In this document: positions 597 to 28,345 of the stretch, in pieces | Numbering within the stretch: position 1 is the stretch's first letter | How the letters are laid out: each line of letters begins with the position of its first letter | Source of the DNA: Octopus sinensis | Lineage: Eukaryota | Length of the DNA: 28,538 nt | Assembly: GCF_006345805.1 (NCBI RefSeq) | Contig: NW_021833527.1 | Span: forward strand, 1-28,538 | Direction: 5' to 3' | Notes under the pieces: generated by a model | Told to the model about the DNA's origin: nothing | Databases searched by the model: none | What the model saw: only the letters and a program-made list of their open reading frames with translations | Position numbers and translations under genes: made by a program

Positions 597-1641
597 CTCA
601 CAATGCTAACCTGGGAGGTGCCAAGGGGGGAATCCAGTAGTGACTTTAGTAATGTAGGCGGTGTAAAAAAATTGATAATGATCAAATTTCCCGTAAAACC
701 CTATTTTTGCCTCATTTAAACTATGTAACCAGAAATAAACTTCAGTGCCCTCTGAATAATATGCTCTTCACTAAAAGTATTGTGTATCCACTAAAAGAAT
801 ATTACTTATTCATACTAGCCAGAATACTTTTATATTTGTGGATTCGATTTCTTCAACCTTTAAATTAAGTTTTCATAACTACACTTTTAGATGAGATAAA
901 GCTAAATCCACATCCCTTGCTAAAAAAATCTAGGAGTTAAAAGATGAAAAACTGCCTTCAGTATTATCTGGAGTATTATGAAACCTGCTAAACCTTTAAC
1001 GATAGATATCGTTGCAAGCTCTGGTGTACAGAATTATTAGAAATCCTAAGATGTTCAGGCGAGGTTATTAATAAATCGGACGAAGTTGGGGTTAAATGCT
1101 CACATTCTATACAGTAATATTTTTTTGTACTTTAAACTCGTTCTGTAGATCACTTCTGTTTATTGCACTCCTATCTATAATCATACATCGTGAAAATTAA
1201 TTTTTAATAAGCGGTTTTTCTCGCAACTTTAGTAGCTTAGTATAACCCAATATTATTGTTATCATAACTGTGAATAATCTAACTGCTCGGACAACCATAG
1301 CTTATAATAACGAACGCTACAGTTTAATCTTAGAGCTTTAAGTTTGATTCGAGTATTGGGATATCTTCATAAGGACTGCATGATCCTTATCTAATCACTG
1401 AATATACACCTCTTTGTAGAATTGTGTTCTATTAACTTAGTTATCTTTGGATATCAAATATTAAATACTAAATATTAAGTATCAAATGTACGAATTTCAA
1501 TATTTAGAACGTTCATAGTTTTGCTATTCTATTATTTCCATATTTTATTACTATTTATTTTACATATTATAATTATTAGTTTAGGACAATCAGTTATCTT
1601 TGTGTGGCTAGAGTTCACTATTCCTGTATTGTTCTCTTTTA

Positions 1642-1889
1642 AGGCGGCGGGCTGGCAGAAACGTTAGCACGCCGGGCGAAATGCTTAGCAGTATTTCGTC
1701 TGCCGTTACGTCCTGAGTTCAAATTCTGCGGAGGTCGACTTTGCCTTTCATCCTTTCGGGCTCGATTAAATAAGTACCAGCTACGCACTGGGGTCGATAT
1801 AATCGACTTAATCCGTTTGTCTGTCCTTGTTTGTCCCCTCTGTGTTTGTCCCCTCTGTGTTTAGCCCCTTGTGGGTAGTAAAGAAATAG
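1642..1889 (+). mobile_element. tRNA-derived SINE family A, monomer
   Basis: Near-identical to copies at 9356, 8682 and 16286. A-box-like TGGCAGAAACG and B-box-like GAGTTCAAAT. Approximately 15-bp TSD GTATTGTTCT(C)TTTTA at 1626-1641 and 1890-1904. Short internal duplication of TGTTTGTCCCCTCTG. Resembles described octopus tRNA-SINEs (OK/OR1/OR2 group), exact name not assigned. Confidence 0.9.
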
Positions 1890-2910: not shown

Positions 2911-3280
2911 GTCATTATCTTACTGTTTTAAATATATCCTAATGAGCGTTAGTATCGCATAGTGTATTGTGTAATCCGAAGAATTGCATTACGCTTGCAT
3001 CAAAAGTAAGACTATCAGGGAAACCATTGCTGCAACATTAAAAATCCATTCGTCTTTGTGTCCATTGTTATTTTGCGCCATGCTCAATGTTTTACTATTC
3101 GCTAAATAACTTGTAAACTATTGGAATTGCGGATTACCCAACAAGAGTGTCTTGAATTCAGCGATGCTTTCTACGTTGATAACGGATTACTTCAATGTCT
3201 GTTCTGCACGATTCCGTCTAGCTAATCAGTGGCGTACTACTCGCTGTTGTGCCATGATTCTTTATAAATCCTTTATAACG

Positions 3281-3423
<143 letters not shown>

Positions 3424-4678
3424 TGTTTCTTTATTAGCCACACAGGGCTGCACACAGACAGGACAAATTACAAGGTAGAGCTTTTCTTTTGGGGGTAAAA
3501 AAGGGGGTTTGGTTTTCGATCAAAGGGATCGTAAAGGGAAAGAAAGAGGACAAAATAAGGGGGGAATAAATTTTTTTAAAAAGGGGGGAGAGGAAAAAAA
3601 AGGGAAAGGAAAAAAAATTGAATAGGGATCGTTATCACAGAAATGTCAATATGAAGTGTAAAGGGGAGGACAGGTGAGGTTTACCCGTGGAAAGAAAAGC
3701 CTACAGAAAAAACCACGGTAACCTCGGTCAATGAAGTCACATGTTATATTTCTTTTTTTTTTGCAAATAAGCAACTCTCTGTTTTAATTTTTACGGTTCA
3801 TAGAATGATAGTCAAGGTGGCTTCGTCATTCATACGTGCCATCCTTGCTACATTCACCTATCTTTTTTTAAAACATTCACTAGACAAAACTTGCCTCTCT
3901 ACTCTCACTTTCCTCTTCAAGTGATACTTGAAGAAGTTGATGAGAGGTTGACCAGAGAGGAAAGTGTCTGTCTCTAATCCTTTCAGGCGCGTCCACCAGA
4001 TACTTCTTTCGCCATAGCTACAAGTATGCTAAAAATAGCTCTTCTTTCCCGTTTGAAGGAAGGAGGCGTGACGATATTAACGATAGACTCGGCTGATAAA
4101 CCGACACGTCCCACACGTGACAGCAGTCGTTCGACATAAGCCCACAGGTCGGAAATTGCTGGACACTGCACGATTGCGTGCAGAGCGGTTTGGTCGCTCT
4201 GCCCGCATCCCGTGTTTCTCGAGCCATGCCTATAGAGCTTATCCCGAACGGGTAGCGCTTCTCGGTAGCACCGCCAGGCCAGGGATCTCTGGAAGTTGTC
4301 CATAGGTCCCGGCGCGAAAGTCGTTTCAAACAGGCAGGTTGTGTTGAAGTCACTCAAGGTCGACCCGGGACGGCAGAGTTGCTTGAGAGCAACGCGACAC
4401 TCGCGGTGCCATTCGCCCTTCCTCGGCCTCTTTTTGATCCACGACTGCAGTTCAGTCATGGAGACGAGCTACGGGAACGCGTGCCTCACAAACGGCGACC
4501 ACACCTGTTCACCGTCGTCTACATAGAGCCGGAGATGTCGCAGTCTCAGCGCGTGTCTGCGCATCATCAACCACGACATGCCCAGCCCTCCTTTTAACGA
4601 GTGTTGACAGCAAATGGATCGCCTGACCATCGGGACGCATCCTGTGCCAGGCGGTGTTGCTAAACCAGGGTGAGGGCG
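3424..4678 (-). mobile_element. Tx1/L1-clade non-LTR retrotransposon, copy 1 (5'-truncated, internally deleted)
   Basis: Colinear with 17453-18865. Encodes the ORF2 C-terminus (MDNFQRSLAWRCYREALPVRDKLYRHG...TALHAIVQCPAISDLW, a damaged CCHC zinc knuckle). Purine-tract 3' UTR on the plus strand. Ends AATAAAGAAACA-(TATC)n. Confidence 0.92.
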
Positions 4679-4692
4679 GATAGATAGATAGG

Positions 4693-4766
<74 letters not shown>

Positions 4767-4785
4767 TATGTATGTATGTATGTAT
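4679..4785. repeat. (GATA)n then (TATG)n tract abutting the 5' junction of Tx1 copy 1
   Basis: Direct reading. Confidence 0.95.
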
Positions 4786-8681: not shown

Positions 8682-9106
8682 TTTATCTATTTCTTTACTA
8701 CCCACAAGGGGCTAAACACAGAGGGGACAAACAAGGACAGACAATCGGATTAAGTTGATTACATCGACCCCAGTGCGTAACTGGTACTTTATTTATCGAC
8801 CCCGAAAGGATGAAAAGCAAAGTCGACCTCAGAGGAATTTGAACTCAGAACGTAACGACAGACGAAATACATGTTTCTTTATTACCTACAAGGGGCTAAA
8901 CATACAGGGGACAAACAAGGACGGACAAACGGATTAAGTCGATTACATCGACACCAGTGCGTAACTGGTACTTAATTTATCGACCCCGAAAGGATGAAAA
9001 GCAAAGTCGACCTCGGCGGAATTTGAACTCAGAACGTAATGGCAGACGAAATATTGCCAAGCATTTCGCCCGGCGCGCTAACGTTTCTGCCAGCTCGCTG
9101 CCTTCG
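8682..9106 (-). mobile_element. SINE family A head-to-tail dimer (full monomer plus monomer lacking the first ~50 nt)
   Basis: Two tandem bodies with junction near 8870. The whole dimer is bounded by a 15-bp TSD AGAATAGGAATATAT (8667-8681, 9107-9121). Confidence 0.9.
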
Positions 9107-9355
9107 AGAATAGGAATATATATTATAGTCAAGGGGAAGGACAGACATGTGGGCATAATAGAGTAGATATATACTAATCAGTGTATGAGAGTAGGCATGT
9201 GGAGAGATATTAGGGGGTGCATGTATAAAGACAGATAGATAAAGGGATGAAGAATAACAGATGCCAGATGATGTCAAATGACCACCAAGGCTGACTAGAT
9301 TTAGCAAAAATGGGAGAGAGGGGTAGTGATGTAATAAAGCGGTTGTAAAAGATAA

Positions 9356-9588
9356 GGCGGCGAGCTGGCAGAAACGTTAGCACGCCGGGCGAAATGTGTA
9401 GCCCTATTTTGTCTGCGGTTACGTTCTGAGTTCAAATTCCGCCGAGGTCGACTTTGCCTTTCATCCTTTCGGGGTCGATAAATTAAGTACCAGTTACGCA
9501 CTGGGGTCGATGTAATCGACTTAATCCGTTTGTCTGTCCTTGTTTGTGTCCTCTGTGTTTAGCCCCTTGTGGGTAGTAAAGAAATAGT
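9356..9588 (+). mobile_element. SINE family A, monomer
   Basis: Full match to the 1642 copy. Perfect 13-bp TSD TTGTAAAAGATAA (9343-9355, 9589-9601). Confidence 0.92.
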
Positions 9589-9862: not shown

Positions 9863-10629
9863 GGCAATCACTCGCATTTCGTCTCTCTCACAGCTGTCAC
9901 AAACTTCGTGAATTTCCGTAGATTTTGTTTTTATTTACTTTTGTTTTCATGACTTGTTGAGCGCAACATTTGCTTTGAAGCCGGAGGAAAGTAAAACAGA
10001 CGATAGCGCGCGCGCGCATTCACACACACACACACAAACACATACGTTGTTCATGACTTGAATAGTGAAACACACTATTGTATGTATGTATGTATGTATG
10101 TATGCAGTGTATATGAAGGATAACAGGTGAACGTGTGTGTGATCGTGTCCCACTGAGTGTACGCGCGCGAGCGTGTTCAACTCTAAGCATTTGTATTCTC
10201 TCACTCACACACATACAAACACACACTTATACAGTGAATGTATGTATGTATTTATGCATGTACATATATATGAAAAATAATGGGTATACGTGTGCGCGCG
10301 CGCGTGTGTGTGTGTGTGCGTGTGCGCGAACATGTTCAGATTTATGTATTTGTTTTCACACACACATGCATGCGCGCCCACACACGCACATACGCATACG
10401 CACAGGTACACGTACGCACATATGTACTTACATATATACATTGGTACAAAAATACATACGTACATTACATATATTGTCCGAGTGGATGTTTCACTATTCA
10501 AGTCATGAACACGAAAGCCAATGAGTGTGTGCGTGCGCCGCGCGCGGAATTGAACAATTGTTACGGATATTAACGAACAACCATTTGTAAAATTATTGAC
10601 AGTTCTGAAACCAAATACGAGTGATTGCC
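9863..10629. mobile_element. Non-autonomous DNA transposon (MITE) with long imperfect TIRs and a microsatellite-filled centre
   Basis: Terminal GGCAATCACTCG(C/T)ATTT inverted (16/17; 9863-9879 vs 10613-10629). Perfect 24-bp inverted GTTCATGACTTGAATAGTGAAACA (10049-10072 vs 10487-10510). Intervening blocks also mirror. No convincing TSD. Confidence 0.7.
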
Positions 10630-11451: not shown

Positions 11452-11655
11452 TTATTTGTTTCAGTCATTTGACTGCGGTCATGCTGGAGCACCGCCTTTA
11501 GTCGAGCAAATCGACTCCGGGACTTATTCTTTGTAAGCCTAGTACTTATTCTATCGATCTCTTTTGCCGAACCGCTAAGTTACGGGGATATAAACACAAC
11601 AGCATCGGTTGTCAAGCGATGTTGGGGGGACAAACACAGACATACAATCACACAC

Positions 11656-11710
<55 letters not shown>

Positions 11711-12017
11711 ATAAATATTAGGGAATGAATCCAAACTTACAGGGAAAAATCAGATTTAGTATTGAATCCAATTTTATAGTAAAATATTATATTATATTAA
11801 ATTAAGTCTTTCATTGTTTGATTTGCCTAATAGTGGTTTTGTCTCTAATTTAATATAATATATATATATATATATGTTTCCGTCTACCAAATCCACTCAC
11901 AAGGCTTTGGTCGGCCCGAGGCTATAGTAGAAGACACTTGCCCAAGATGCCACACAGTGGGACTGAACCCGGAACCATGTGGTTGGAAAGCATGCAACTT
12001 ACCACACAGCCACTCCT
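11452..12017 (-). mobile_element. Bipartite SINE family B (tRNA/CORE-like left monomer, microsatellite spacer, right monomer) inserted in the PLE
   Basis: Reverse complement of the 14303-14716 copy. Its (CA)/(TA) spacer holds an extra AT-rich module at 11712-11864. Confidence 0.9.
11712..11864. repeat. AT-rich interspersed module embedded in (TA)n
   Basis: Flanked by (TA)n on both sides. 11809-11864 matches 22161-22216 at 53/56 nt. Confidence 0.55.
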
Positions 12018-13619
12018 TTTTTTAATTTTTCACTGTTTTATGACTGGAAAATTTGTTTTGAAGATGTTAAAAATGTTTTGGTGATGCGGATTGTGTTACT
12101 AGAAATGGTATTGTGTTCCTTTGATGGATTCGTCTTTCTCGTGTTGCCCTAAGTTGTACTATCGGTATCTCTTTTGCTCGTTGTATGTTATTTTCTATAA
12201 GTAGGAGAGGGTATTTTTGCTTGAGTAGAAATCCTTTACGTTCTATAAGTCGTGTGTTCCTGGCATTTGTATCATCTGCTATAGTAAATATTTTCCTGGC
12301 TAGACAGTACAGGATGTTGCATTTTGTGTGTGTTGTGTGACATGATTTGAAATTTAGGTACTGGTGTGTATCTGTGCTTTTGTAATAAATATCAGTTGTG
12401 ATTGTGGTGTTGTTTTTAATTACCATTATGTCAAGAAATGGTAACTGTGCGTTGTTCCTTTCTCTTGTGAATGGAAACAAGGGTATAGATTGTTAAGGAA
12501 GGTGCTGAATTCTTCCAGATTTTCTAGGGGTTTGGTCCAAATTAGGAAACAATCATCAAGGTATCCTTTCTATGTGTCTTCTATATGTCTTCTAAAGGTC
12601 ATGCCGTAGTTTTCTTCAATTTTTTTACATAGGTATCCCAATACTGAGTTCACGACAACTGAGAAAATCGCTTCCCTTTAGCGGTGCCTCGAATTTGGAG
12701 GTAGATTTTTCTGTTGTAAAGGAATGTATTATTTTCGAGGATGAGGCTGACTGCGTCTAATATGAAGGTTACTGTAAATTTAATAGGGATCACTTCTCTA
12801 TGTTTCCCGACCTAATATTTTATGGCAGTAATTCCCAAATCATGTGAATTGTTCGTATGTAAGTTTGTTATATCAAAACTAACTAGCAGTGAATTGGGTT
12901 TGGATATGCGTTGCTAATTCGCAATTTTACAACCTACTGCCAGAAATATATACGTCACTAAAGTGATAGAGGGCACTAATCAGCACCAGTATTGCTAGAA
13001 ATAAGAGTCAAAACAACAGAAGCCCTATCTTAATGAGTGATAAGGGAGGTAAGCTCCCCCCGGCAACAGATATAGCCGGATCATCGATAATTTCACACTT
13101 TGATGCTCAGGCATCGTAATGCTCGTCGGTAGCTATGGTTAAACTCATCTCGCTTTGTCAGTTTATATGATTTCTATTGAAATCTAACGCTGATTTCATG
13201 AACAGTAAAAGTGAAAATTACATGGGTGTTTAGTGTCTTTTGTCACTTTATTGACGTATATATTTCTGCCTTTAGGTTGTAATATTGCGAATTAGCCACC
13301 CATAGCTGAGAAAATAAAAGAGATGTGGATTAAAGCTTTTACAAAAGAAGAAAGTAAGTCAATATATTTATGGCAAAAGAAACAATTATTAAACATGCTG
13401 CAAAGTACGGAAATGACACTTCAGTACCAAGTAAAAGAAATATAAGGAAGTAACCTAACAAACACCACATACACGAAAACACGTGGGAGCAAAAACAGTC
13501 AACCAACCTTAAGGAACTACTGTAAGTACACGTTACCATTTAAAAATAGAAAGAAACATACCAACACATGTAACATACAATATATATCTGTGTGTATGTG
13601 TGTGTATGCGTGCGCGTAC

Positions 13620-14233: not shown

Positions 14234-14243
14234 CACTCATCTA

Positions 14244-14302
<59 letters not shown>
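14234..14302. repeat. (TA)n microsatellite
   Basis: Direct reading. Confidence 0.97.
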
Positions 14303-14305
<3 letters not shown>

Positions 14306-14715
14306 CGCAGGAGTGGATGTGTGTGAAGTAGCTTGTTTACCAACCACATGGTTCCGGGTTCAGTCCCACTGCGTGGCACCTTGGGCAAGTGTCTTCTACT
14401 ATAGCCTCGGGCCGACCAAAGCCTTGTGAGTGGATTTGGTAGATGGAAACTGAAAGAAGCCCGTCGTATATATGTATATATATATATATGCGTGTGTGTG
14501 TTTGTGTGTCTGTGTTTGTCCCCCTAGCATTGCTTGAAAACCATTGCTGGTGTGTTTATGTCCCCGTTACTTAGCGGTTCGGCAAAAGAGACCGATAGAA
14601 TAAGTACTGGGCTTACAAAAGAATAAGTCCCGGGGTCGAGTTGCTCGATTAAAAAAAAGGTGGTGCTACAGCATGGCCGCAGTCAAATGACTGAAACAAG
14701 TAAAAGAGTAAAGAG

Positions 14716-15240: not shown

Positions 15241-15546
15241 TCTTTACTCTTTACTTGTTTCAGTCATTTGAATGTGGCCATGCAGGACCACCGCCTTTAG
15301 TCGAGCACATCGACCCCAGGACTTATTCCTTGTAAGCCTAATACTTATTTTATCAGAATCTTTTGCCGAACCGCTAAGTTACGTGGACGTAACACACCAG
15401 CACCGGTTGTCAAGCGATATTGGGAGGACAAACACAAACACACAAACGTATACACACACACATACATACATACATACATACATACATACATACATACATA
15501 CATACATACATACATACACACACACATACATACATACATACATACA

Positions 15547-15582
<36 letters not shown>

Positions 15583-15861
15583 TATATGAATTTTTCTTAA
15601 AGTAGTGGAAATAGCTAAAAAACCTTTTGGCTGCTATTTCTAAAAACTTCAGTATGTGGCAAAGTAATTTATTTTAATAAGCCCTAATTATATATATATA
15701 TATATATATACGACGGGCTTCTTTCAGTTTCCGTCTACCAAATCCACTCACAAATCTTTGGTCGGTCCGAGGCTATAGTAGAAGAGACTTGCCCAAGGTG
15801 CCACGTAGTGGGACTGAACCCGGAACCATGCAGTTGGTAAGCACAGAGCCACTCCTATGCC

Positions 15862-15902: not shown

Positions 15903-16725
15903 ATTTGTTTCAGTCATATAATTGCAGCCATGCTGGGGCACTGCTTTGGAGAATTTTAAGTCGAATAATCGGCACCAGTACTTAAATTTTTTATCTAAAC
16001 CTCGTACTTATTCTATCGTACTTATTCTATAAGTTATGGGGACGTAAACAGACTAACACCGGTTGGCAAGTAGTGATAGGGAACAAACCTAAATACAAAA
16101 ACACACACACATACACACACACGAGAACACACACATATGTGTACGATGAGCTTATTCCAGTTTCCGCCAACCGAATAAACTCACAAGGATTTGGTCGGCA
16201 CGAGGCTGTAGTAGAAGATGCTTACTCAAGGTGCTATGCTGTGGGACTGCAGCCAAAACCATGTTGTTAGAAAGCAAGCTTCTTATTTCTTTATTGCCCA
16301 CAAAGGGCTAAACATAGAGGGGACAAACAAGAACAGGCAAACGGATTAAATCGATTAGATTGACCCCAGTACGTAACTGGTACTTAATTTATCGACCCCG
16401 AAAGGATGAAAGGCAAAGTCGACCCCGGCAGAATTTGAACTCAGAACGTAACGGCAGACAAAATACCTATTTCTTTACTACCCACAAGGGGCTAAACACA
16501 GGGGCGACAAACAAGGAAAGACAAACAGATTAAGTCGATTATATCGACCCCAGTGCGTAACTAGTACTTATTTAATCGGCCCCGAAAGGATGAAAAGCAA
16601 AGTCGACCTAGCGGAATTTGAACTCTGGACGTAGCGGTAGACGAAATACCACAAAGTATTTCGCCCGGCGTGCTAACGCTTCTGCCAGCTCGCCGCCTTC
16701 TTACCACATACCAATGCCCGCACCT
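15903..16725 (-). mobile_element. Older, diverged SINE family B copy, split by a family A dimer
   Basis: Recognisable right monomer (15903-16080) and left monomer (16145-16285). The head resumes after the insertion at 16701 (TTACCACATACC). Confidence 0.75.
16286..16696 (-). mobile_element. SINE family A head-to-tail dimer, second instance
   Basis: Same architecture and junction as 8682-9106. CTTCTTA is duplicated at 16279-16285 and 16697-16703. Confidence 0.9.
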
Positions 16726-17229: not shown

Positions 17230-17274
<45 letters not shown>

Positions 17275-17282
17275 CAGATAGA

Positions 17283-17342
<60 letters not shown>

Positions 17343-17367
17343 TAGACAGATAGACAGACAGACAGAC

Positions 17368-17452
<85 letters not shown>
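17228..17452. repeat. (GATA)n/(GACA)n tract abutting the 3' end of Tx1 copy 2
   Basis: Direct reading. Confidence 0.97.
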
Positions 17453-17453
<1 letters not shown>

Positions 17454-20400
17454 GTTTCTTTATTGGCCACACAGGGCTGCACACAGATGGGACAAGTTAC
17501 AAGGTAGAGCTTTTCTTTTGGGGGATGAAAAAAACAAAAAACAAAAGAAACAAAAAAAGGGGTGGAGTAGGTTTTCGATCAAGAGGGATCGTAAAAGGGA
17601 AGAAAAGAACAAAAAAAAATAAAATAAATAAAAAATAAAAAAAGAAAAAGAAAAAGAAAAAAGAAAAGGAAAAGGAACAAAAGAAAAGAGAAATGAAAAA
17701 AGAAGAAAAAGGGAAAAAAAGGGGAAGAGAAAAAAAAAAAAAGGAACGATCAATAGGGATCGTGTATCACAGTGTTATGATATATGGTGTAAAGGGGAAA
17801 GCAAGTAAAGTTTATCCGTGGGAAGAAAAGCCTACGAAAAAGACCACGGTAACCTTGGTCAATATTGTTATATGTTACCACATTTGTTTGCAAGTGGGTA
17901 ACCCTCTGTTTTCAATTTCTGGGTTCATAGGATTATGCTCAAGGTGGCTTCGTCATTCATACGTGCCATCCTTGCTACATTCACCCATCTTTTTTTAAAA
18001 CATTCGCTAGACAAAACTTGCCTCTCTACTCTCACTTTCCTTTTCAAGTGGTACTTGAAGAAGTTGATGAGAGATTGGCCAGAGAGGAAAGTGTTTGTCT
18101 CCAATCCTTTCAGACGCGTCCACCAGATACATTCTTTCGCCATAGCCACAAGGATGATGAAAATAGCTCTTCCTTCCCGTTTGAAGGAAGGAGGCGTGAC
18201 AATATTGACGATAGACTCAGCTGATAAACCGACTCGTCCCACACGTGACAGCAGTTGTTCGACACAAGCCCACAGGTCGGAAATTGCTGGACACTGCACG
18301 ATTGCGTGCAGAACGGTTTCGTCGCTCTGACCGCATCTCGGGCAGGTCGGCCCCGTGTTTCTCGAGCCGTGTCTGTAGAGCTTATCCCGAACGGGTAGCG
18401 CTTCTCGGTAACACTGCCAGGCCAGGGATCTCTGGAAGTTGTCCATGGATCTGGCCCGAAAGTCGTCCTGAACAGGCGGGTCAGGTACTCCTCGTCGACG
18501 TCCAGGTTCGCCCCGAGCTCGTCGTCGTACCTCCCTCCCTAATCCCCTATAGAATGCTTTGGTTGTGTTGAAGTCACTCAAGGTCGACCCAGGACGGCAG
18601 AGTTGCTTGAGAGCAACGTGACACTCGCGGTGCCATTCGCCCTTCCTCGGCCTCTTTTGATCCACGACTGCAGTTCGGTCATGGAGACGAGCTGCGGGAA
18701 AGCGTGCCTCACAAACGGCGACCACACCTGTTCACCGTCGTCTACATAGAGCCAGAGATGTCGCAGTCTCAGCGCGTGTCTGCGCATATCAACCACGGCA
18801 TGCCCAGCCCTCCTTTTAACGGGTGTTGACAGCAAATGGATCGCCTGACCATCGGGACGCATCCTTTCCACAAGAAGCGAAAGAGAATGCGTTGTAGTTT
18901 GGTGATGGTAGGGTCGGGACAAGGTACGACGGTCAGGCGGTAGTAGATGACGGACGCGATGTACGTGTTCGCCACCTCCGCCCGACCTTTTAGGGACAGT
19001 TTCCTCTCGGCCCATTGCCGGGCGAGAGTGACCACCCTACTCGTTATCTCGTTCCAGTTCTTCTCCACTTGGAGGTCCGGACCAAACCAGACCCCGAGCA
19101 ACTCAACCGGGCCGTCGGTCCAGCGTCCCACGACGGAGGCGCTGGTGGACGGCATGGGCTTGCTTCTCCAGGTGCCTAGTCGCAAGCCCACTGACTTTTC
19201 CCGGTTGATTTTCGCTCCTGTCACCGCTTCGTAGTTTTTCAGTGTCTCGCCGACCTGCTCGATGTGCTCGTGGCTAGACACTATGACGGTGACGTCGTCC
19301 GCGTATGCAGACACGCTCGTCCCGCATCCCAGTTCTCGCGGGATGTCCCTTAAAGTTGCCAGCTTCCGCAATAATGGCTCGAGAGTCAATACGTATAGAA
19401 GCGACGAGAGGGGGCATCCCTGACGGACCGAACGTGCGATGTCGAAGGGTCTCGATAGATGTCCATTCACGCGAATTAACCGAACGGATGCCTCTGTACA
19501 AAGCGGCTATCCAGCCGCGGAAGACGGGACCGAAGCCAGCCGCTCTGAGGACCGCCTCCAAGTATCGATGGTCTACACCCTATCGAAAGCTTTCGATTGA
19601 TCCAAATTGATCAGCGCCCCACCCATGCCAGGTTCGCTAACTACCCGTCTATGATGTAGCGCATCAGGTGTAGGTTGTCATGGATGGTCCGGCCTGGCAC
19701 GGCGCATGTTTGCGCCTTGTCGACCAATTTCTCGATGACAAGCGCCAACCTCTTGGCTAGCACCTTGGCCAAAATTTTCAAGTCTGCATTAAGCAGAGTG
19801 ATGGGCCTAAAGTTATCTATTACATTTCCCCTGTTTAGATCTTTCTTCAGCAGTGTTACGGCTCCTCGGCTCACAAAACCAGGAATGCTCCCGTTTTGCT
19901 GCCAGTTGCAGTACACCGCCGCCAAGAGAATTCCAAACAAGTCTGGCATACAATTGTAAAGCTCGTAGGGTAGACCATCCAAACCCGGTGATTTGTCCCT
20001 CGAGCATTCTGCCATCGCGTCCTGCACTTCTGCCGCCGTGATGGCACCTTCGCAGCACCCTGCCTTTCTTGTCGAGAGTCGTGGTAGGTTATGTAGGTAG
20101 GCACTGAAGTCCACCCTACGTTCTTGCCCTCCACTTGTCCCGAACAGTCGGGCAAAATGCTGCTGAAAGGCCTCACAAATTTTACTTGGCTCGAGCAATT
20201 CGCGCCCCTGTTCATCTACCAGGGACCGAATGGTGGCTTTGTTGCCCTGTTGCGCCTCTGCCACCCGGGCCTCTCTCGCGGCTCCAACACCTTCGTTCCT
20301 TAGAGCACGCATCCTAGCTCTGACAGCACATCCTTCGTGTTTGGCGTTGAAGTGTTGGTCGAGGGCCAACCTCGCCGCCAAAACGTCGGATGCGATGCCG

Positions 20401-20598
20401 CTTCTAATTGCCTCTTCTAGCTTCTTAACTAGCTCACCCTCTACTCTATTTCTATCTATGGCTAGTGCTTTGCTGTACCTAATCGCTCCTGCTTTTACTG
20501 CTCTCTTGAGGGCAAACCACCATTTGTTGTTGATGATGGCTCCCGTCAAAGCCCTCTTTACTAGTGTGCTAATCCGGTCTCTGAAAACCTGTCTCGAT
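17453..20598 (-). mobile_element. Tx1/L1-clade non-LTR retrotransposon, copy 2 (about 3.1 kb, 5'-truncated just downstream of the expected APE domain)
   Basis: Complete RT motif series plus a CCHC knuckle, a 3' UTR, and an end AATAAAGAAACT-(TATC)n. (GATA)n lies on both flanks. Confidence 0.95.
17925..20598 (-). pseudogene. Frameshifted ORF2 (reverse transcriptase plus zinc knuckle) of Tx1 copy 2
   Basis: NFRPITLLNADLKILAKVLAKRL, QTCAVPGRTIHDNLHLMR, LINLDQSKAFDRV, RSVRQGCPLSSLLY, SAYADDVTV, YEAVTGAKINREKS, VELLGVWF and CPRCGQSDETVLHAIVQC are spread over several reading frames (ORFs 19641-20738, 19274-19561, 18769-19470, 17925-18725). Confidence 0.9.
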
Positions 20599-20623
20599 GA
20601 GATAGATAGATAGATAGATAGAT

Positions 20624-20681
<58 letters not shown>
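20599..20681. repeat. (GATA)n tract abutting the 5' truncation point of Tx1 copy 2
   Basis: Direct reading. Confidence 0.97.
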
Positions 20682-20915
20682 GCGTGTGTGTACGTTTGTA
20701 TGTATGTATTCTGTATATTCATGTGTTTGTGAGTTCATGTTTGTATGCTTGTGTGTGTATTTGTGCGCGTATCTCTTTGTGCATGTTTGAGTGTGTCTAT
20801 GTATATGGGTTTTGTTACTATGTACGTCTGTCTGTTATGTATATGTGCGTACCTTTGTGTGTCGTTGTGTGTATGCGTATAGGAAGTGTGTGAAGTGTTT
20901 AATATATATATAATA

Positions 20916-21435: not shown

Positions 21436-21593
21436 CAGAGAGACAGACAGACAGACAGAAGGAAAAGCATATACACGGTATGCAATTAAAGTAGGAAAAT
21501 ATACATAGTATACCACACTAAGAAAAATAATAATAAATGTGTGTGTATGTGTGTGTACATACACACATTTATACATACATACATAAATATACA

Positions 21594-21594
<1 letters not shown>

Positions 21595-21636
<42 letters not shown>

Positions 21637-21737
21637 TTCTATATACATATAGATATGTATATATATGTATATATTGTATATATACATATATATATATATA
21701 TATTATATATATATATATATAATATATATTATATATA

Positions 21738-21785
<48 letters not shown>
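21595..21785. repeat. Degenerate (TA)n tract
   Basis: Direct reading. Confidence 0.95.
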
Positions 21786-21788
<3 letters not shown>

Positions 21789-21946
21789 TAAAAACGGTAA
21801 GGTAACAAAAGAAAGAAAGAGACCTCAATATTATGTAAATTGAGGAATCTATCTGTAAAATAATATGTGACAATTATTCATTAGCCAAGATAAAACTCTG
21901 AGTTCGGATGCCGAGGTGGAAATCCACACCACCATCTCTTCGGTAA
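21786..21946 (-). mobile_element. (TA)n-embedded module carrying a degenerate hammerhead-like motif, probably PLE-derived
   Basis: Minus strand 21943-21889: CCGAAGA-GATG-[GTGGA/TCCAC hairpin]-CATC-CGAACTC-A-GAGTT-TTATC. Bounded by (TA)n on both sides. Confidence 0.45.
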
Positions 21947-21970
21947 TATAATATATATATATATATATAT

Positions 21971-22079
21971 ATACTTACCTGGCACAGGGGTAAACCATGA
22001 TCATCAAGGTGGTTCTCCCAGAGTGAGGCCCTTCCATTGCACTCCGGTTGGGTTGACCTTTGCGATCGCCCCAAATGTG
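21971..22079 (+). pseudogene. U1: U1 snRNA 5' fragment (109 nt; 3'-truncated, lacks Sm site and stem-loop IV)
   Basis: ATACTTACCTGG 5' end, stem-loop I (loop GATCATCAAG vs canonical GATCACGAAG), stem-loop II loop ATTGCACT, then ...GCGAT..CCCCAAATGTG as in metazoan U1. Similarity stops at 22079. The upstream sequence is only (TA)n, with no room for a PSE. Confidence 0.92.
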
Positions 22080-22699
22080 TGTTATATTAATTATCTTTTT
22101 TATAATTTTGATATATATTAAATAATATAAATTAATTAATCTTATGTATTGGCTTTAATTTTTCATTGTATGATTTGCCTAATAGTGTTTTTATCTCTAA
22201 TTTAATATAATATATATTATATATATTATATATATATATATATAGCCAAGCAGGCGAAGATAGAGAGATCTAGATATGTACGTACACACATTCACATCTA
22301 TAAGTTCTGTAATGCTTAACAACAAACGACACAGTAAATAGGGAGAACTCAATACTTACAGAGTGAATATATGTATTTATACAATACGTATAGTCATGTC
22401 TTTAGCGAACCCGCGTATTTGCGCATACACACACGTGAACGTACACATATTAAAGTGTAGTTGTATTCAGTTGTTACACAGGCAACATGCAAACTGGGTA
22501 ATACATTTAAAATGGCATTCACTAGTTGTAAAATCAATACATGACTATTTCTGCTAAGTCTTACCATCGATTTACTCTTCCTCATTAATTAGTTGTAAAG
22601 ATAGCAATTATTATTGTTATTAATATTAATACTATTGTTTTAATAGCAATTATTATATTTTTTTATTTGCTATAAGGCTGCAGCGCAAGAAGAGTATAC

Positions 22700-23460
22700 C
22701 ACGCGCGCACACTTACACACGCGCACACTTACATACACCCACACTTACACACACACACACTTACACACATACACACATACACACACACACTTACACACAC
22801 ACACTACACACACACACTTACACACACACATACATACACACACACACACACTTACACACACACATACTTACACACACACACACCACACTTACACACACAC
22901 ACCTTACACACACACTTACACACACACACACTACACACACACATACTTACACACACACACGCTCACACACACTACTTACCACACCACCACACCTACACAC
23001 ACACACACTTACACACACACACACTTACACACACACACCACACTTACACACACACACACTTACACACAACTTACACACACATACACTTACACACACACAC
23101 ACACTTACACACACAACACTTACACACCACACACTTACACACAACACACTTACACACACACACATACACTTACACACACACACACTTACACACACACTTA
23201 CACACACACACACTTACACACACACACACTTACACACACACTCACACTTACACACACACACTTACACACACACTTACACACACACACACTTACACACACA
23301 CAATTACACACACACACACTTACACACACACTCACACTTACACACACACACTTACACACACACTTACACACACACACTTACACACACACACACACACACT
23401 TACACACACGCACATTTACACACACACATACTTACACACACACACACACACGCTCACACA
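22700..23460. repeat. CA-rich minisatellite of variable (CA)3-7-CTTA units
   Basis: Direct reading: dozens of ACTTACACAC units. Confidence 0.92.
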
Positions 23461-23999: not shown

Positions 24000-24763
24000 T
24001 ACGTGCTAGTGGTGGGGGTGGGGTGGGGTGGGTGTTGGGTGGGGTGGGTGTTGGGTGGAGTGGGGTAGGGAGTGTAGCGATAGACTTTTGTTGATGTCAT
24101 TGTTAGCGTTGTTAGCAAGGATCGTGGTGGTGCTGGTGCTGGTGCTAGTGGTGGTGCTAGTGGTGGTGGTGGTGCTGCTGCTGCTGGTTCTGGTGGTGGT
24201 GGTGGTGGTGGTGGTGGTGTCGGTGCTGGTGCTGGTGGTGGTGGTAGTGTCGGTGCTGGTGCTGGTGGTGGTGCTGGTGGTGGTGCTGGTGGTGGTGCTG
24301 GTGGTGGTGGTGCTGGTGGTGGTGGTGGGGGGGGGGGGTTGTATCGATAGACTTTTGTTGATGTCATTGTTAGTGTTGTTAGCAAGGATCGTGATGGTGG
24401 TGGTGGTGGTGGTGGTGGTAGTGGTGATGGTGCTGGTGGTGCTGGTGCTGGTGCTGGTGCTGGTGCTGGTGCTGCTGTTGCTGCTGGTGCTAGTGCTGAT
24501 GCTGATGGTGGTGCTAGTGCTGGTGCTGATGGTCGTGGTGGTGGTGCTGGTGGTGGTGGTGGTAGTGTCGGTGCTGGTGGTGGTGCTGGTGCTGGTGCTG
24601 GTGCTGGTGCTGCTGTTGCTGCTGGTGCTAGTGCTGATGCTGATGGTGGTGCTAGTGCTGGTGCTGATGGTGGTGGTGGTGGTGGTGCTGATGCTGGTGG
24701 TGGTGGTGCTGGTAATGGTGGTGGTGCTGGTGGTGGTGCTGGTAGTGGTGGTGGTGGTGGTGG

Positions 24764-24795
<32 letters not shown>

Positions 24796-25100
24796 GTAGT
24801 GGTGGTGCAGGTGCTGGTGATGCTGGTGGTGCTGGTGGTGGTGCTGGTAGTGGTGGTGGTGGTGCTGCTGCTGCTGCTGCTGCTCCTGGTAGTGGTGGTG
24901 CTGGTGCTGGTGGTGCTGGTGGTGCTGGTATTCGTCGTCGTCGTTCTTGTGTGCAATGTAGAGGGATCGGAGGTCATTTTGTTGTTTCCGTTGTAATTGC
25001 TTATGGTGGTACTGAGAATGTGAACAATGGTGATGCCGGTGGCTGTAGAAAGTGTATATAGTAATGGTAATGGTGGTAATGGCGGTAATGATCATGCTGG
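24000..25100. repeat. GGT/GCT/GAT trinucleotide low-complexity block with internal duplications
   Basis: Direct reading. The ~48-bp non-repetitive spacer CGATAGACTTTTGTTGATGTCATTGTTAG...AGCAAGGATCGTG is duplicated at 24078 and 24345, and a ~90-bp unit is duplicated at about 24445 and 24583. Confidence 0.9.
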
Positions 25101-27215: not shown

Positions 27216-27587
27216 ACAAACATCCCCTTCAACCTTGCAAGAAGGATATGCACAATAGTGTCAGAACAAAATACCAGGAACTTTAGACTGCAAGAACTCA
27301 AAAACACCCTAATTGACAGACATTACCCAGCTCAACTCATAGAGGATGGGATCAGACGTGCAACAGAAATCAACATAGAAACTTTAAGAAAAGTTCAACA
27401 CAACAACACACCTTCCTCGAAAATACTACCTTACATATCCACATACAACCCCAGAAACAAAGAAGCCTTCACCATCATCACCCAGAATTTACCAATACTT
27501 CATAAGGACCCCAAATTAAAGGAAATTCTAAACATACACCAAATCATTAAAAGCTACAAACAACCTAAATCACTTAAAAAGATTCTC
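27216..27587 (+). mobile_element. PLE internal segment (RT thumb/linker), open frame
   Basis: TNIPFNLARRICTIVSEQNTRNFRLQELKNTLIDRHYPAQLIEDGIRRA...LPYISTYNPRN...IIKSYKQPKSLKKIL is homologous to the 12067-12480 and ~11390 segments of the other PLE. Confidence 0.85.
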
Positions 27588-27591
27588 CCAG

Positions 27592-27760
27592 AGGGTTTTA
27601 GTCGAACAAATCGATCCCAGGACTTATTTTTTTAAATCCTGGTATTTATTCTATTGGACTCTTTTGCCGAACTGCTAAGTTATGGGGACGAAACGAAATA
27701 TATCAACACCGGTTGTCAATCGGTGGGGAGGAAAATCACACACACACACACATACATATA
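27592..27760 (-). mobile_element. Right monomer of SINE family B, lacking its tail
   Basis: Inverted near-copy of 28135-28285. Confidence 0.85.
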
Positions 27761-27799: not shown

Positions 27800-27892
27800 C
27801 TACATACATACATGCATGCATACATACGTACGTACATACATACATACATACATACATACATACATACATACATACATACATACATACATACA
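27800..27892. repeat. (TACA)n microsatellite
   Basis: Direct reading. Confidence 0.95.
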
Positions 27893-27970: not shown

Positions 27971-28345
27971 AGGCGTGGCTATGTAGTAAGAAGCTTGCTT
28001 CCCAATAAACATGACTCCGGGTTCATTCCCACTGCGAGACACCTTGGGTAAGTGTTTTCTACTATAACTTCGAGCTGACCAAAGCCTTGCGAGTGGATTT
28101 GGTAGACGGAAACTGAAAGAAGCCCGTCGTATATGTATGTGTGTGCTTTTCCTCTCCACCGCTTGACAACCGGTGTTGATGTATTTCGTCCCCATAACTT
28201 AGCAGTTCGGCAAAAGAGTCCAATAGAATAAGTACCATGATTTTAAAAAATAAGTCCTGGGATCGATTTGTTCGACTAAAACCCTTCAAGGCGGTGCTTC
28301 AGCATGGCGGCAGTCAAATGACTAAAACAAATAAAAGAATAAAAG
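27971..28345 (+). mobile_element. Bipartite SINE family B, full length
   Basis: Head, CORE-like CACCTTGGGTAAGT, short spacer, right monomer and (TAAAAGAA)2 tail. Confidence 0.9.

What the first reader, a model, noticed from the sequence alone, without database searches (positions are those of the whole stretch)
21971..22242. U1 snRNA 5' fragment fused to an interspersed-repeat end inside (TA)n: snRNA chimera or U1-headed SINE
Seen: U1 similarity starts exactly at +1, directly after (TA)n with no promoter, and stops at nt 109 before the Sm site. About 80 AT-rich nt follow, then a 56-nt segment 53/56 identical to 11809-11864, then (TA)n again. The splice-site-pairing 5' end and the U1A loop are intact, while the U1-70K loop has two changes. 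Known: snRNA-head/retroelement-tail chimeras arise by template switching (U6-L1), and U1/U2-headed SINEs (SINEU) exist in crocodilians. Inference: an RNA-mediated U1 capture by a (TA)n-inserting element. The hammerhead-bearing module just upstream (21786-21946) may be the other arm of the same host element, with U1 replacing its middle.
Basis: partly seen in the sequence, partly recalled or inferred. Interest (0 to 1): 0.7.

Follow-up and report, generated by a model that had tools for sequence, protein, structure and literature searches.

The report
U1 snRNA fragment retrocopy in (TA)n
A copy of the first 109 bases of the spliceosomal U1 RNA sits in a TA-repeat tract of a cephalopod genome, next to or fused with the tail of a small mobile element; this is an ordinary by-product of retrotransposon activity, not a working U1 gene or a ribozyme-bearing element.

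Summary
The sequence observation is real. Window 21971-22079 is U1 snRNA nt 1-109: Rfam scores it 71.5 bits, and it is 89-93% identical to three full-length U1 genes I fetched. It starts at +1 directly after (TA)n and breaks at the edge of the stem-loop 3 loop. The Sm site and stem-loop 4 are missing, and no displaced 3' half exists elsewhere in the window. An 81-nt spacer (10% GC) follows, then a 56-nt tail that is 53/56 identical to 11809-11864 (0 of 1000 shuffles reach this score), then (TA)n.

New context: the other tail copy is an insert in the internal (TA)n of a SINE-like repeat whose sister copies lack it. The window's L1/Tx1-type LINE has a (TCTA)n tail and lies inside (GATA)n. So microsatellite-targeted retroposition operates in this genome.

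Best reading: an RNA-mediated U1 fragment joined by reverse-transcriptase template switching to a (TA)n-tailed non-autonomous retroposon. I could not tell a one-off chimera from a U1-headed SINE family, because no searchable collection holds host DNA.

Rejected: the upstream "hammerhead" module has no Rfam hit and no CUGANGA core, and it is unrelated to the tail. The "U1-70K loop changes" are at least partly typical of the lineage.

This is a known kind of feature and of modest interest.

The parts
21537..21785 (.). Compound (CATA)n/(TA)n microsatellite, the host tract that holds the inserts
   Evidence: Sequence; list of TA tracts
21786..21952 (.). Module A: an unclassified ~165-nt insert flanked by (TA)n. 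It has a 7-bp hairpin near its 5' end and a GC-rich hairpin near its 3' end, and it ends ATCTCT-TCGG-TAATATAAT. It is not a hammerhead and is not related to the tail or to module B.
21953..21970 (.). (AT)n stretch between module A and the U1 fragment
21971..22079 (+). U1 snRNA nt 1-109: the 5' splice-site-pairing end, SL1, SL2, and the SL3 5' arm plus loop. It is 3'-truncated at the edge between the SL3 loop and its 3' arm.
   Evidence: Rfam 71.5 bits; 8, 9 and 12 mismatches to L001, L002 and L003, while those differ from each other by 11-18; SL1 differences are compensatory; all 3 CpGs are kept
22080..22160 (+). AT-rich spacer (81 nt, 9.9% GC) of unknown origin. It could be the body of the retroposon or degenerate target tract. 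It contains an Sm-like AATTTTGA at 22104-22111 that is no more than chance.
   Evidence: no significant match to module B; 181/2000 shuffles have an Sm-like site
22161..22216 (+). 56-nt shared 3' tail module, TTTCATTGTATGATTTGCCTAATAGTGTTTTTATCTCTAATTTAATATAATATATA, with a small internal hairpin (CAUUGU/AUAGUG)
   Evidence: 53/56 identical to 11809-11864, 0/1000 shuffles; folds
22217..22244 (.). (TA)n after the tail: either the element's 3' repeat or the rest of the target tract
11712..11864 (+). Module B, the second tail-bearing element (tail = 11809-11864). It is inserted in the internal (CA)n(TA)n tract of a SINE-like repeat. Its 5' part is unrelated to U1 or to the spacer. A perfect 17-bp AT stem (11788-11804 / 11846-11862) encloses the tail core.
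   Evidence: Alignment with sister copies that lack the insert, 14295-14640(-) and 27990-28300(-)

Best explanation
The U1 piece is a dead, RNA-derived copy of the first 109 nt of U1 snRNA. It is not a gene.

Proposed sequence of events:
1. A LINE-encoded reverse transcriptase that works on (TA)n tracts started cDNA synthesis on the (UA)n end of a short, AT-rich, non-coding retroposon RNA. That RNA is the spacer plus the 56-nt tail.
2. The enzyme ran to or near the 5' end of that RNA.
3. It then switched template into the single-stranded stem-loop 3 loop of a U1 snRNA. A UG/GUG microhomology at ...AAAUGUG|UGUU... may have guided the switch.
4. It copied U1 to its capped 5' end, and the cDNA was joined into the (TA)n tract.

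Shown:
- the anatomy;
- the RNA-type 5' boundary;
- the break at a loop;
- the shared terminal tail in two (TA)n-embedded elements;
- that one of those two is an insertion;
- that a microsatellite-tailed LINE embedded in its own microsatellite exists in this genome.

Inferred:
- that U1, spacer and tail arrived in one event;
- the template switch itself;
- the identity of the LINE.

Unresolved: whether the fusion happened at this locus (a one-off chimera, about 0.35) or in a master copy that then multiplied (a U1-headed SINE family, about 0.25). Both are sub-cases of this explanation.
For: - U1 begins at +1 with no upstream gene sequence. No promoter-like or 3'-box similarity to real U1 loci was found.
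- The break lies at the SL3 loop. Published snRNA retrocopies break in single-stranded segments, and U3 and U5 enter chimeras by internal switching (PMC4476161).
- There is no displaced U1 3' half anywhere in the window, so U1 was not split by a later insertion.
- The fragment is undecayed: compensatory SL1 differences, nt 48-109 differ from L001 at one base, CpGs kept.
- The 56-nt tail is shared in the same orientation and ends at (TA)n in both copies.
- Module B is an insert relative to two uninterrupted sister repeats, and a third sister copy has a different insert at the same tract.
- The window's own L1/Tx1-type LINE (RVT_1 + zf-RVT) ends in (TCTA)n and is flanked by (GATA)n on both sides, in two copies truncated at different points.
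- LINEs that need a specific 3' tail make snRNA copies only as template-switch chimeras (PMC4476161). Tx1 LINEs and SINEU repeatedly gained U1/U2 heads this way (PMC4494074).
- An Octopus vulgaris repeat annotation lists one 'SINE/U' family (369 kb) and one 'U-L1' family (53 kb) (PMC13282606).
Against: - Only one U1-tail junction could be seen, and no other copy was available.
- The 81-nt spacer has no counterpart in module B, so the donor RNA is not defined and the spacer could be degenerate target tract.
- Target-site duplications cannot be read inside a microsatellite.
- No LINE with this 56-nt 3' end was found in the window or in 20 kb of O. bimaculoides.
- In platypus U6-L2 chimeras the snRNA is mostly 5'-truncated, whereas here it is 5'-complete and 3'-truncated.
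Confidence: 0.6

Rival explanations
1. Two independent insertions lie side by side. A 'tailless', 3'-truncated U1 retropseudogene was primed directly on the U1 SL3 loop by a nicked (TG)n(TA)n target. It landed in the same TA-rich tract as a separate, possibly 5'-truncated, copy of the tail element. Under this reading the 81-nt spacer is degenerate tract.
For: - (TA)n tracts here collect several unrelated inserts. Module A lies about 18 nt upstream of U1, and the same tract of a SINE-like repeat holds two different inserts in two copies.
- The spacer is 90% AT, begins TGTGTTATATTAATTAT, which resembles a compound microsatellite, and does not match module B.
- In human, 3'-truncated tailless copies are the commonest class of snRNA retrocopy (65%) and break in single-stranded segments (PMC4476161).
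Against: - No clean (TA)n separates U1 from the spacer, unlike the stretch between module A and U1.
- Tailless copies are a property of relaxed L1. LINEs that need a specific tail were reported to give only chimeras, and a conserved 56-nt tail suggests such a requirement.
- The spacer has T-runs and other motifs that are not simple TA repeat.
Confidence: 0.2
2. This is capture during break repair. Long (TA)n tracts are fragile, and a double-strand break was patched by end joining that copied or ligated in stray nucleic acids (U1 cDNA, other fragments) without any retrotransposon integration machinery.
For: Four unrelated inserts sit in TA tracts within 28.5 kb. No readable target-site duplications or element termini were found for module A or for 15588-15690.
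Against: - Two inserts share a defined 56-nt terminus in the same orientation, abutting (TA)n. That points to an element end rather than random filler.
- The window shows a LINE with the analogous behaviour of lying within its own microsatellite.
Confidence: 0.06
3. This is DNA-level capture by a TA-targeting DNA transposon (a Tc1/mariner-type MITE or a Helitron-like element) that picked up part of a U1 gene.
For: Insertion at TA/AT sites. Module B has a perfect 17-bp inverted repeat around the tail core.
Against: - There are no terminal inverted repeats at the ends of the U1-tail unit, and no 5'-TC / CTRR-3' ends or GC-rich 3' hairpin.
- The inverted repeat is internal and is not conserved in the U1 locus.
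- A DNA capture would not be expected to start exactly at the transcription start of U1.
Confidence: 0.03
4. It is an assembly artefact: a collapse or mis-join inside a long TA-rich region has juxtaposed pieces that are not adjacent in the genome.
For: The locus lies within about 700 nt of low-complexity TA repeat, where assemblers fail.
Against: The junctions U1/spacer and spacer/tail lie in unique sequence, not in the repeat. There is nothing else to indicate a join. It cannot be tested without reads.
Confidence: 0.03
5. It is a working variant U1-like RNA gene with a replaced AT-rich 3' domain: the Sm-like AAUUUUGA followed by an AU hairpin.
For: The 5' splice-site-pairing end, SL1 and SL2 are intact. 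An Sm-like site lies at 22104-22111.
Against: - The Sm-like site is expected by chance (181/2000 shuffles).
- There is no promoter-like or 3'-box similarity to real U1 loci.
- The 3' arm of SL3 and all of SL4 are absent.
- (TA)n abuts +1.
Confidence: 0.01

Closest known systems
snRNA/LINE template-switch chimeras: U6-L1 and U3-, U5-, U1-L1 in mammals; U6-L2 and U6-Mon-1 in platypus; U6-AnolisSINE2 in lizard (PMC4476161; PMC13174262)
   Same: - The snRNA sits at the 5' side, in sense orientation, and reaches its own 5' end.
- The 3' side is a short terminal piece of a retroposon.
- For U3 and U5 the snRNA is 3'-truncated at loops.
- For L2 the tail ends in a simple repeat and target duplications are tiny.
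   Different: - The host is a cephalopod.
- The 3' repeat is (TA)n and the insertion is inside (TA)n.
- The partner retroposon and LINE are unidentified.
- Platypus U6 pieces are mostly 5'-truncated, whereas this U1 is 5'-complete.
SINEU (U1/U2-headed SINEs of crocodilians; Kojima 2015, PMC4494074)
   Same: - A short non-coding retroposon with a U1-derived head and an unrelated 3' part.
- Heads are added by template switching.
- It is mobilised by target-specific (Tx1) LINEs with a shared target preference.
- It has no internal promoter.
   Different: - SINEU has poly(A) tails and prefers a Mariner element as target; this unit has (TA)n at both ends.
- SINEU is defined by thousands of copies sharing junctions, which could not be tested here.
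- The paper reports SINEU only in crocodilians.
Tailless 3'-truncated snRNA retropseudogenes (Van Arsdell 1981; Schmitz 2004; Group II of Doucet 2015)
   Same: The copy is 5'-complete and broken in a single-stranded segment, with possible short complementarity (UGUG) at the 3' junction.
   Different: Those join directly to target DNA and have clear target duplications at L1 cleavage sites. Here a 137-nt AT-rich segment with a shared retroposon tail follows, and duplications cannot be read.
Auto-classified 'SINE/U' and 'SINE/U-L1' families of Octopus vulgaris (PMC13282606)
   Same: The host group is the same or close, and the class label implies an snRNA-derived head on a repeated element.
   Different: That paper gives only counts (369 kb and 53 kb, one family each) and no sequence or description. 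The 19 'recent' SINE/U insertions average about 730 bp, which does not look like this 246-nt unit. Identity with this element was not testable.

Membership tests
U1 spliceosomal RNA gene (Rfam RF00003) | Score at or above the curated gathering score | tested here: met
   71.5 bits against 69.5, so barely over. All of the score comes from nt 1-109. Real U1 genes found here score 126-156 bits.
U1 spliceosomal RNA gene (Rfam RF00003) | Complete fold: four stem-loops plus an Sm site | tested here: not met
   The SL3 3' arm, the Sm site and SL4 are replaced by AT-rich sequence. The Sm-like motif is at chance level.
U1 spliceosomal RNA gene (Rfam RF00003) | External snRNA promoter upstream and a 3' box downstream | tested here: inconclusive
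   (TA)n abuts +1, and there is no similarity to the flanks of three real U1 loci. However, no cephalopod promoter model was available, and the three comparators share no obvious upstream motif with each other.
SINEU (snRNA-headed SINE) | 5' head derived from U1 or U2 snRNA on a short non-coding unit | tested here: met
   U1 nt 1-109 heads a 246-nt unit with no ORF of note.
SINEU (snRNA-headed SINE) | Many dispersed copies sharing the same head-body junction | not testable with these tools
   There is one copy in the window. SINE-core and U1 probes find no host DNA in the metagenome, genome or viral collections. The window's ORFs are not in the gene index. The junction-ORF search found only full-length U1 genes.
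SINEU (snRNA-headed SINE) | 3' poly(A) tail | tested here: not met
   The unit ends in TAATATAAT(AT)n, not poly(A). PMC4494074 states that all SINEU groups have poly(A) tails.
SINEU (snRNA-headed SINE) | Target preference shared with a partner LINE | tested here: inconclusive
   Both tail-bearing elements lie in (TA)n. No LINE with this tail or this target was seen. The window's LINE uses (GATA)n.
snRNA/retroposon template-switch chimera | snRNA at the 5' side, in sense, reaching its own 5' end | tested here: met
   The alignment to U1 starts at model position 1, with a 3-nt ambiguity against the (TA)n.
snRNA/retroposon template-switch chimera | The 3' part is the normal 3' end of a known LINE or SINE | tested here: inconclusive
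   A 56-nt terminal module is shared with one other (TA)n-embedded insert. Its parent family is unknown, and the 81-nt spacer is unmatched.
snRNA/retroposon template-switch chimera | The whole unit is flanked by one pair of target-site duplications | not testable with these tools
   Both flanks are (TA)n, so any duplication is invisible. No orthologous empty site was available.
Hammerhead ribozyme (claimed for 21786-21946) | CUGANGA and GAAA core in a three-helix junction | tested here: not met
   No Rfam ribozyme hit at E<=10 on 601 nt. No CUGANGA on either strand of 21700-22300.
TA-targeting DNA transposon (MITE or Helitron-like) | Terminal inverted repeats, or 5'-TC...CTRR-3' ends with a 3' GC-rich hairpin | tested here: not met
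   Only low-complexity AT inverted repeats were found. None lies at the ends of the U1-tail unit.

The most novel reading that the evidence does not exclude
The unit is one copy of a multiplied U1-headed SINE family of cephalopods: head = U1 nt 1-109, an AT-rich body, and a 56-nt LINE-derived tail ending in (TA)n. It would be mobilised by a LINE that needs this tail and that integrates specifically into (TA)n microsatellites. That would be the first characterised snRNA-headed SINE outside crocodilians, with a microsatellite tail and target instead of poly(A).
Probability: 0.25. Interest if true: 0.5.

Novelty: new member of a known kind. Interest (0 to 1): 0.3.

Why it matters
If it is only a chimeric retrocopy, it is a routine footprint showing that template switching onto snRNAs also happens with cephalopod retroelements. 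It also marks (TA)n tracts as insertion hot spots in a very repeat-rich genome.

If it is a family, it would extend snRNA-headed SINEs to molluscs. It would also give a handle on a (TA)n-specific LINE/SINE partnership, which may help explain how microsatellites and SINEs spread together in octopus genomes.

Either way it has a practical use: annotation pipelines will call this locus a U1 gene, because it passes the Rfam threshold, although it cannot make a U1 snRNP.

Tried and rejected
1. Hammerhead in module A. No Rfam hit even at E<=10 on a 601-nt scan, and no CUGANGA core. Rejected.
2. Module A as part of the same element. It has no similarity to module B or the tail beyond chance, and no second copy. 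The only shared feature is a short 3' motif, ATCTCT-N4-TAATATAAT, which is suggestive but weak.
3. Tail homology extended to ~96-117 nt. Not above shuffles.
4. Module B's 'AAACTTACAGGG' as a decayed U1 head. Not significant (133/1000). That region is a ~34-nt tandem duplication (my reading of the sequence).
5. The Sm-like AAUUUUGA plus an AU hairpin as a replacement 3' domain. At chance level.
6. A displaced U1 3' half or promoter similarity. None found.
7. Finding more copies:
   - Chance ORFs across the junction were used as handles in the 5.8-billion-protein database. This found four ORFs over full-length U1 genes but no junction copy. The minus-strand ORF found nothing.
   - Exact look-ups of window ORFs failed.
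   - DNA pattern scans for the tail, the lineage U1 and the SINE core in metagenome, prokaryote-genome and viral collections all gave 0 hits. Those collections therefore hold no host DNA, and the negatives carry no weight.
8. Sampling related genomes through LINE reverse-transcriptase homologues. 20 kb of Octopus bimaculoides shares a ~165-nt repeat family (79-83%) but contains no tail, module A or main SINE. An ENA contig shares only a LINE fragment.
9. Identifying the assemblies behind the closest hits from the literature. Nothing found.

Full report
**What is there**

Rfam finds one family above its curated threshold in the whole 28.5-kb window: U1 spliceosomal RNA at 21971-22136, 71.5 bits against a gathering score of 69.5 (same result in a local scan). 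The score comes entirely from the first 109 nt.

To fix the boundary I needed real U1 genes from related animals. I translated the reading frame that happens to be open across the U1 fragment and searched the large protein database with it. This returned four chance ORFs lying over U1 genes. I fetched the contigs for three of them, and each holds a full-length U1 scoring 126-156 bits.

Aligned to these, the window is collinear through ...GCGATCGCCCCAAATGTG (22079). It then reads TGTTATATTAAT where all three read GGGC(G/A)ACTCG.... In the Rfam structure line the last shared base is the first base of the 3' arm of stem-loop 3, so the break is at the edge of the loop.

The fragment differs from the three comparators at 8, 9 and 12 of 109 positions, while they differ from each other at 11-18. 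Its stem-loop 1 differences are compensatory. Nt 48-109 differ from L001 at a single base, and all three CpGs are kept. It therefore looks like a fresh copy of a functional U1, not an old decayed one.

The 5' splice-site-pairing end and the stem-loop 2 loop are intact.

**Around the fragment**

(TA)n runs directly into the U1 5' end, and the first ATA could belong to either. After nt 109 come:
- 81 nt at 9.9% GC;
- a 56-nt segment that is 53/56 identical to 11809-11864;
- (TA)n again.

Against 1000 dinucleotide shuffles, the following results hold:

| Comparison | Shuffles reaching the observed score |
|---|---|
| 56-nt tail core, 22161-22216 vs 11809-11864 | 0/1000 |
| AT-rich spacer vs 5' part of module B | 805/1000 |
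| U1 fragment vs 5' part of module B ('ACTTACAGGG') | 133/1000 |
| Module A vs module B | 851/1000 |
| Module A vs spacer + tail region (22080-22216) | 439/1000 |

Only the 56-nt core is significant. No 3' half of U1 lies anywhere else in the window, so U1 was not split by a later insertion. The upstream sequence shows no similarity to the flanks of real U1 loci. An Sm-like AAUUUUGA in the spacer is expected by chance (181/2000 shuffles).

**The 'hammerhead' module**

Scanning only 21700-22300 with the most permissive Rfam setting gives no ribozyme hit at E<=10. Neither strand of that stretch contains the CUGANGA core, and the single CUGA is followed by GUUCGG. Module A (21786-21952) has hairpins and a 3' end, ATCTCT-TCGG-TAATATAAT(AT)n, that loosely echoes the tail's ATCTCT-AATT-TAATATAAT(AT)n. 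Otherwise it is unrelated and unique in the window. I treat it as a separate insert in the same tract.

**Context that bears on mechanism**

1. The second tail copy can be shown to be an insertion. A SINE-like repeat of this genome has an internal (CA)n(TA)n tract.
   - Copies at 14295-14640(-) and 27990-28300(-) run straight through it.
   - The copy at 11490-12030 has module B (11712-11864, ending in the tail) inside the tract.
   - The copy at 15380-15860 has a different ~100-nt insert at the same place.

   So (TA)n tracts here repeatedly receive short foreign pieces. At least two of these pieces share a fixed 3' end that abuts (TA)n.
2. The window's own LINE has RVT_1 plus zf-RVT domains, the L1/Tx1 type of domain set. 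It is present as two copies truncated at different 5' points. Both end ...GGCCAATAAAGAAAC(T/A)TA(TCTA)n and both have the same microsatellite on their 5' side. That is direct evidence for a microsatellite-tailed LINE embedded in its own microsatellite in this genome. It is the behaviour needed to explain (TA)n-embedded, (TA)n-tailed short elements.
3. The host is a cephalopod related to, but not the same as, Octopus bimaculoides. One reverse-transcriptase homologue is annotated from that species. 20 kb around it shares a ~165-nt repeat family with the window at 79-83%, but not the window's main SINE.

**Mechanism**

The exact RNA 5' end, the absence of gene flanks, the break at a loop and the retroposon-type 3' end together point to reverse transcription.

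The literature supplies close parallels:
- In mammals, snRNA retrocopies break in single-stranded segments. U3 and U5 enter LINE chimeras 3'-truncated, by internal template switching (PMC4476161; PMC13174262).
- LINEs that need a specific 3' tail (L2, RTE) were found to make snRNA copies only as template-switch chimeras. Platypus U6-L2 chimeras carry a short L2 tail ending in a simple repeat.
- In crocodilians, Tx1 LINEs and their SINEU partners repeatedly gained U1 and U2 heads this way (PMC4494074).

I therefore favour a single retroposition event. cDNA synthesis started on the (UA)n end of the spacer+tail RNA, switched into the U1 stem-loop 3 loop (possibly through UG/GUG microhomology at ...AAAUGUG|UGUU...), and ran off at the U1 cap.

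The steps actually shown are the anatomy and the insertion behaviour of the tail family and of a LINE. The single event, the switch and the partner LINE are inferred.

**What could not be settled**

Whether this junction is unique or shared by many copies is the key question, and it was not answerable.
- The tail core, a lineage-specific U1 stretch and the SINE core each gave zero hits in the collections scanned with them. Those collections therefore contain no host DNA, and the negatives mean nothing.
- Exact look-ups of window ORFs failed.
- An Octopus vulgaris repeat annotation lists one auto-classified 'SINE/U' family (369 kb) and one 'U-L1' family (53 kb) without description. So a family is plausible, but the 19 'recent' SINE/U insertions average about 730 bp, unlike this unit.

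I put a one-off chimera at about 0.35 and a multiplied family at about 0.25.

The main true rival (0.2) is two neighbouring insertions: a tailless truncated U1 retrocopy next to a separate tail element, with the spacer being degenerate tract. The crowding of inserts in these tracts makes that credible. The lack of clean (TA)n between U1 and spacer, and the apparent tail requirement, argue against it. Break-repair capture, DNA-transposon capture, mis-assembly and a working variant U1 are each unlikely, for the reasons given under the rivals.

**Verdict**

The feature is a non-functional U1 5' fragment generated through RNA, associated with a (TA)n-dwelling retroposon. This is a known kind of event in a new host. 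It passes Rfam's U1 threshold and would be mis-annotated as a U1 gene.

Noticed in passing
window 17230-20700 (minus strand) and 3277-4770 (minus strand): Two 5'-truncated copies of an L1/Tx1-type LINE (RVT_1 + zf-RVT). Both end in ...AATAAAGAAAC(T/A)TA(TCTA)n and both are flanked on the 5' side by the same (GATA)n microsatellite. This suggests a (GATA)n-specific LINE family.
   Followed up: partly
window 11490-12030(+), 14295-14640(-), 15380-15860(+), 27990-28300(-): An abundant SINE-like repeat with an internal (CA)n(TA)n tract. The tract is expanded to (CATA)n in one copy and holds foreign inserts in two of the four copies. Two copies are followed by (TA)n at the 3' end.
   Followed up: partly
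window 15588-15690: A ~100-nt insert in the SINE's (TA)n tract. It has a strong hairpin (GGAAAUAGC...GCUGCUAUUUCU) and is unrelated to module A, module B or the tail.
   Followed up: partly
window 1641-1854, 8687-9587, 16284-16699; L004:3789-3954: A ~165-230-nt repeat family present in tandem and inverted pairs (for example 8874-9104 against 9354-9584, 92% complementary). It is shared with Octopus bimaculoides at 79-83% identity.
   Followed up: no
window 21942-21979: Module A ends GGTAAT, and U1 begins with its complement, ACTTACC. Together with the (TA)n between them this makes a 19+19-nt near-palindrome in which a 5'-splice-site-like GGUAAU faces the U1 5' end. It is probably coincidence.
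   Followed up: no
window 24000-25000: A GTG/GCT-rich minisatellite (60% GC, strong GC skew) with a higher-order repeat marked by ATCGATAGACTTTTGTTGATGTCATTGTTAG. The long ORFs on both strands (322-323 aa; Ser/Thr-rich on the minus strand, Val/Leu-rich on the plus strand) look like low-complexity artefacts.
   Followed up: no
window 12067-12480(-) and 27258-27635(+): Two ORF fragments with no Pfam hit (for example ...LPFLDIMVIKNNTTITTDIYYKSTDTHQYLNFKSCH...). From memory they resemble the region after the reverse transcriptase of Penelope-like elements. This was not verified.
   Followed up: no
window 22659-23440: A long (CACACTTA)n-like degenerate satellite immediately downstream of the locus. 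It accounts for the strong negative GC skew at 22-24 kb.
   Followed up: no
whole window, e.g. 27813-27885, 10304-10374, 14239-14309: Dozens of sub-threshold Rfam 'microRNA' matches (mir-297, mir-466, mir-1277 and others) all lie on TG/TA/CATA microsatellites and are artefacts of repeat hairpins.
   Followed up: yes
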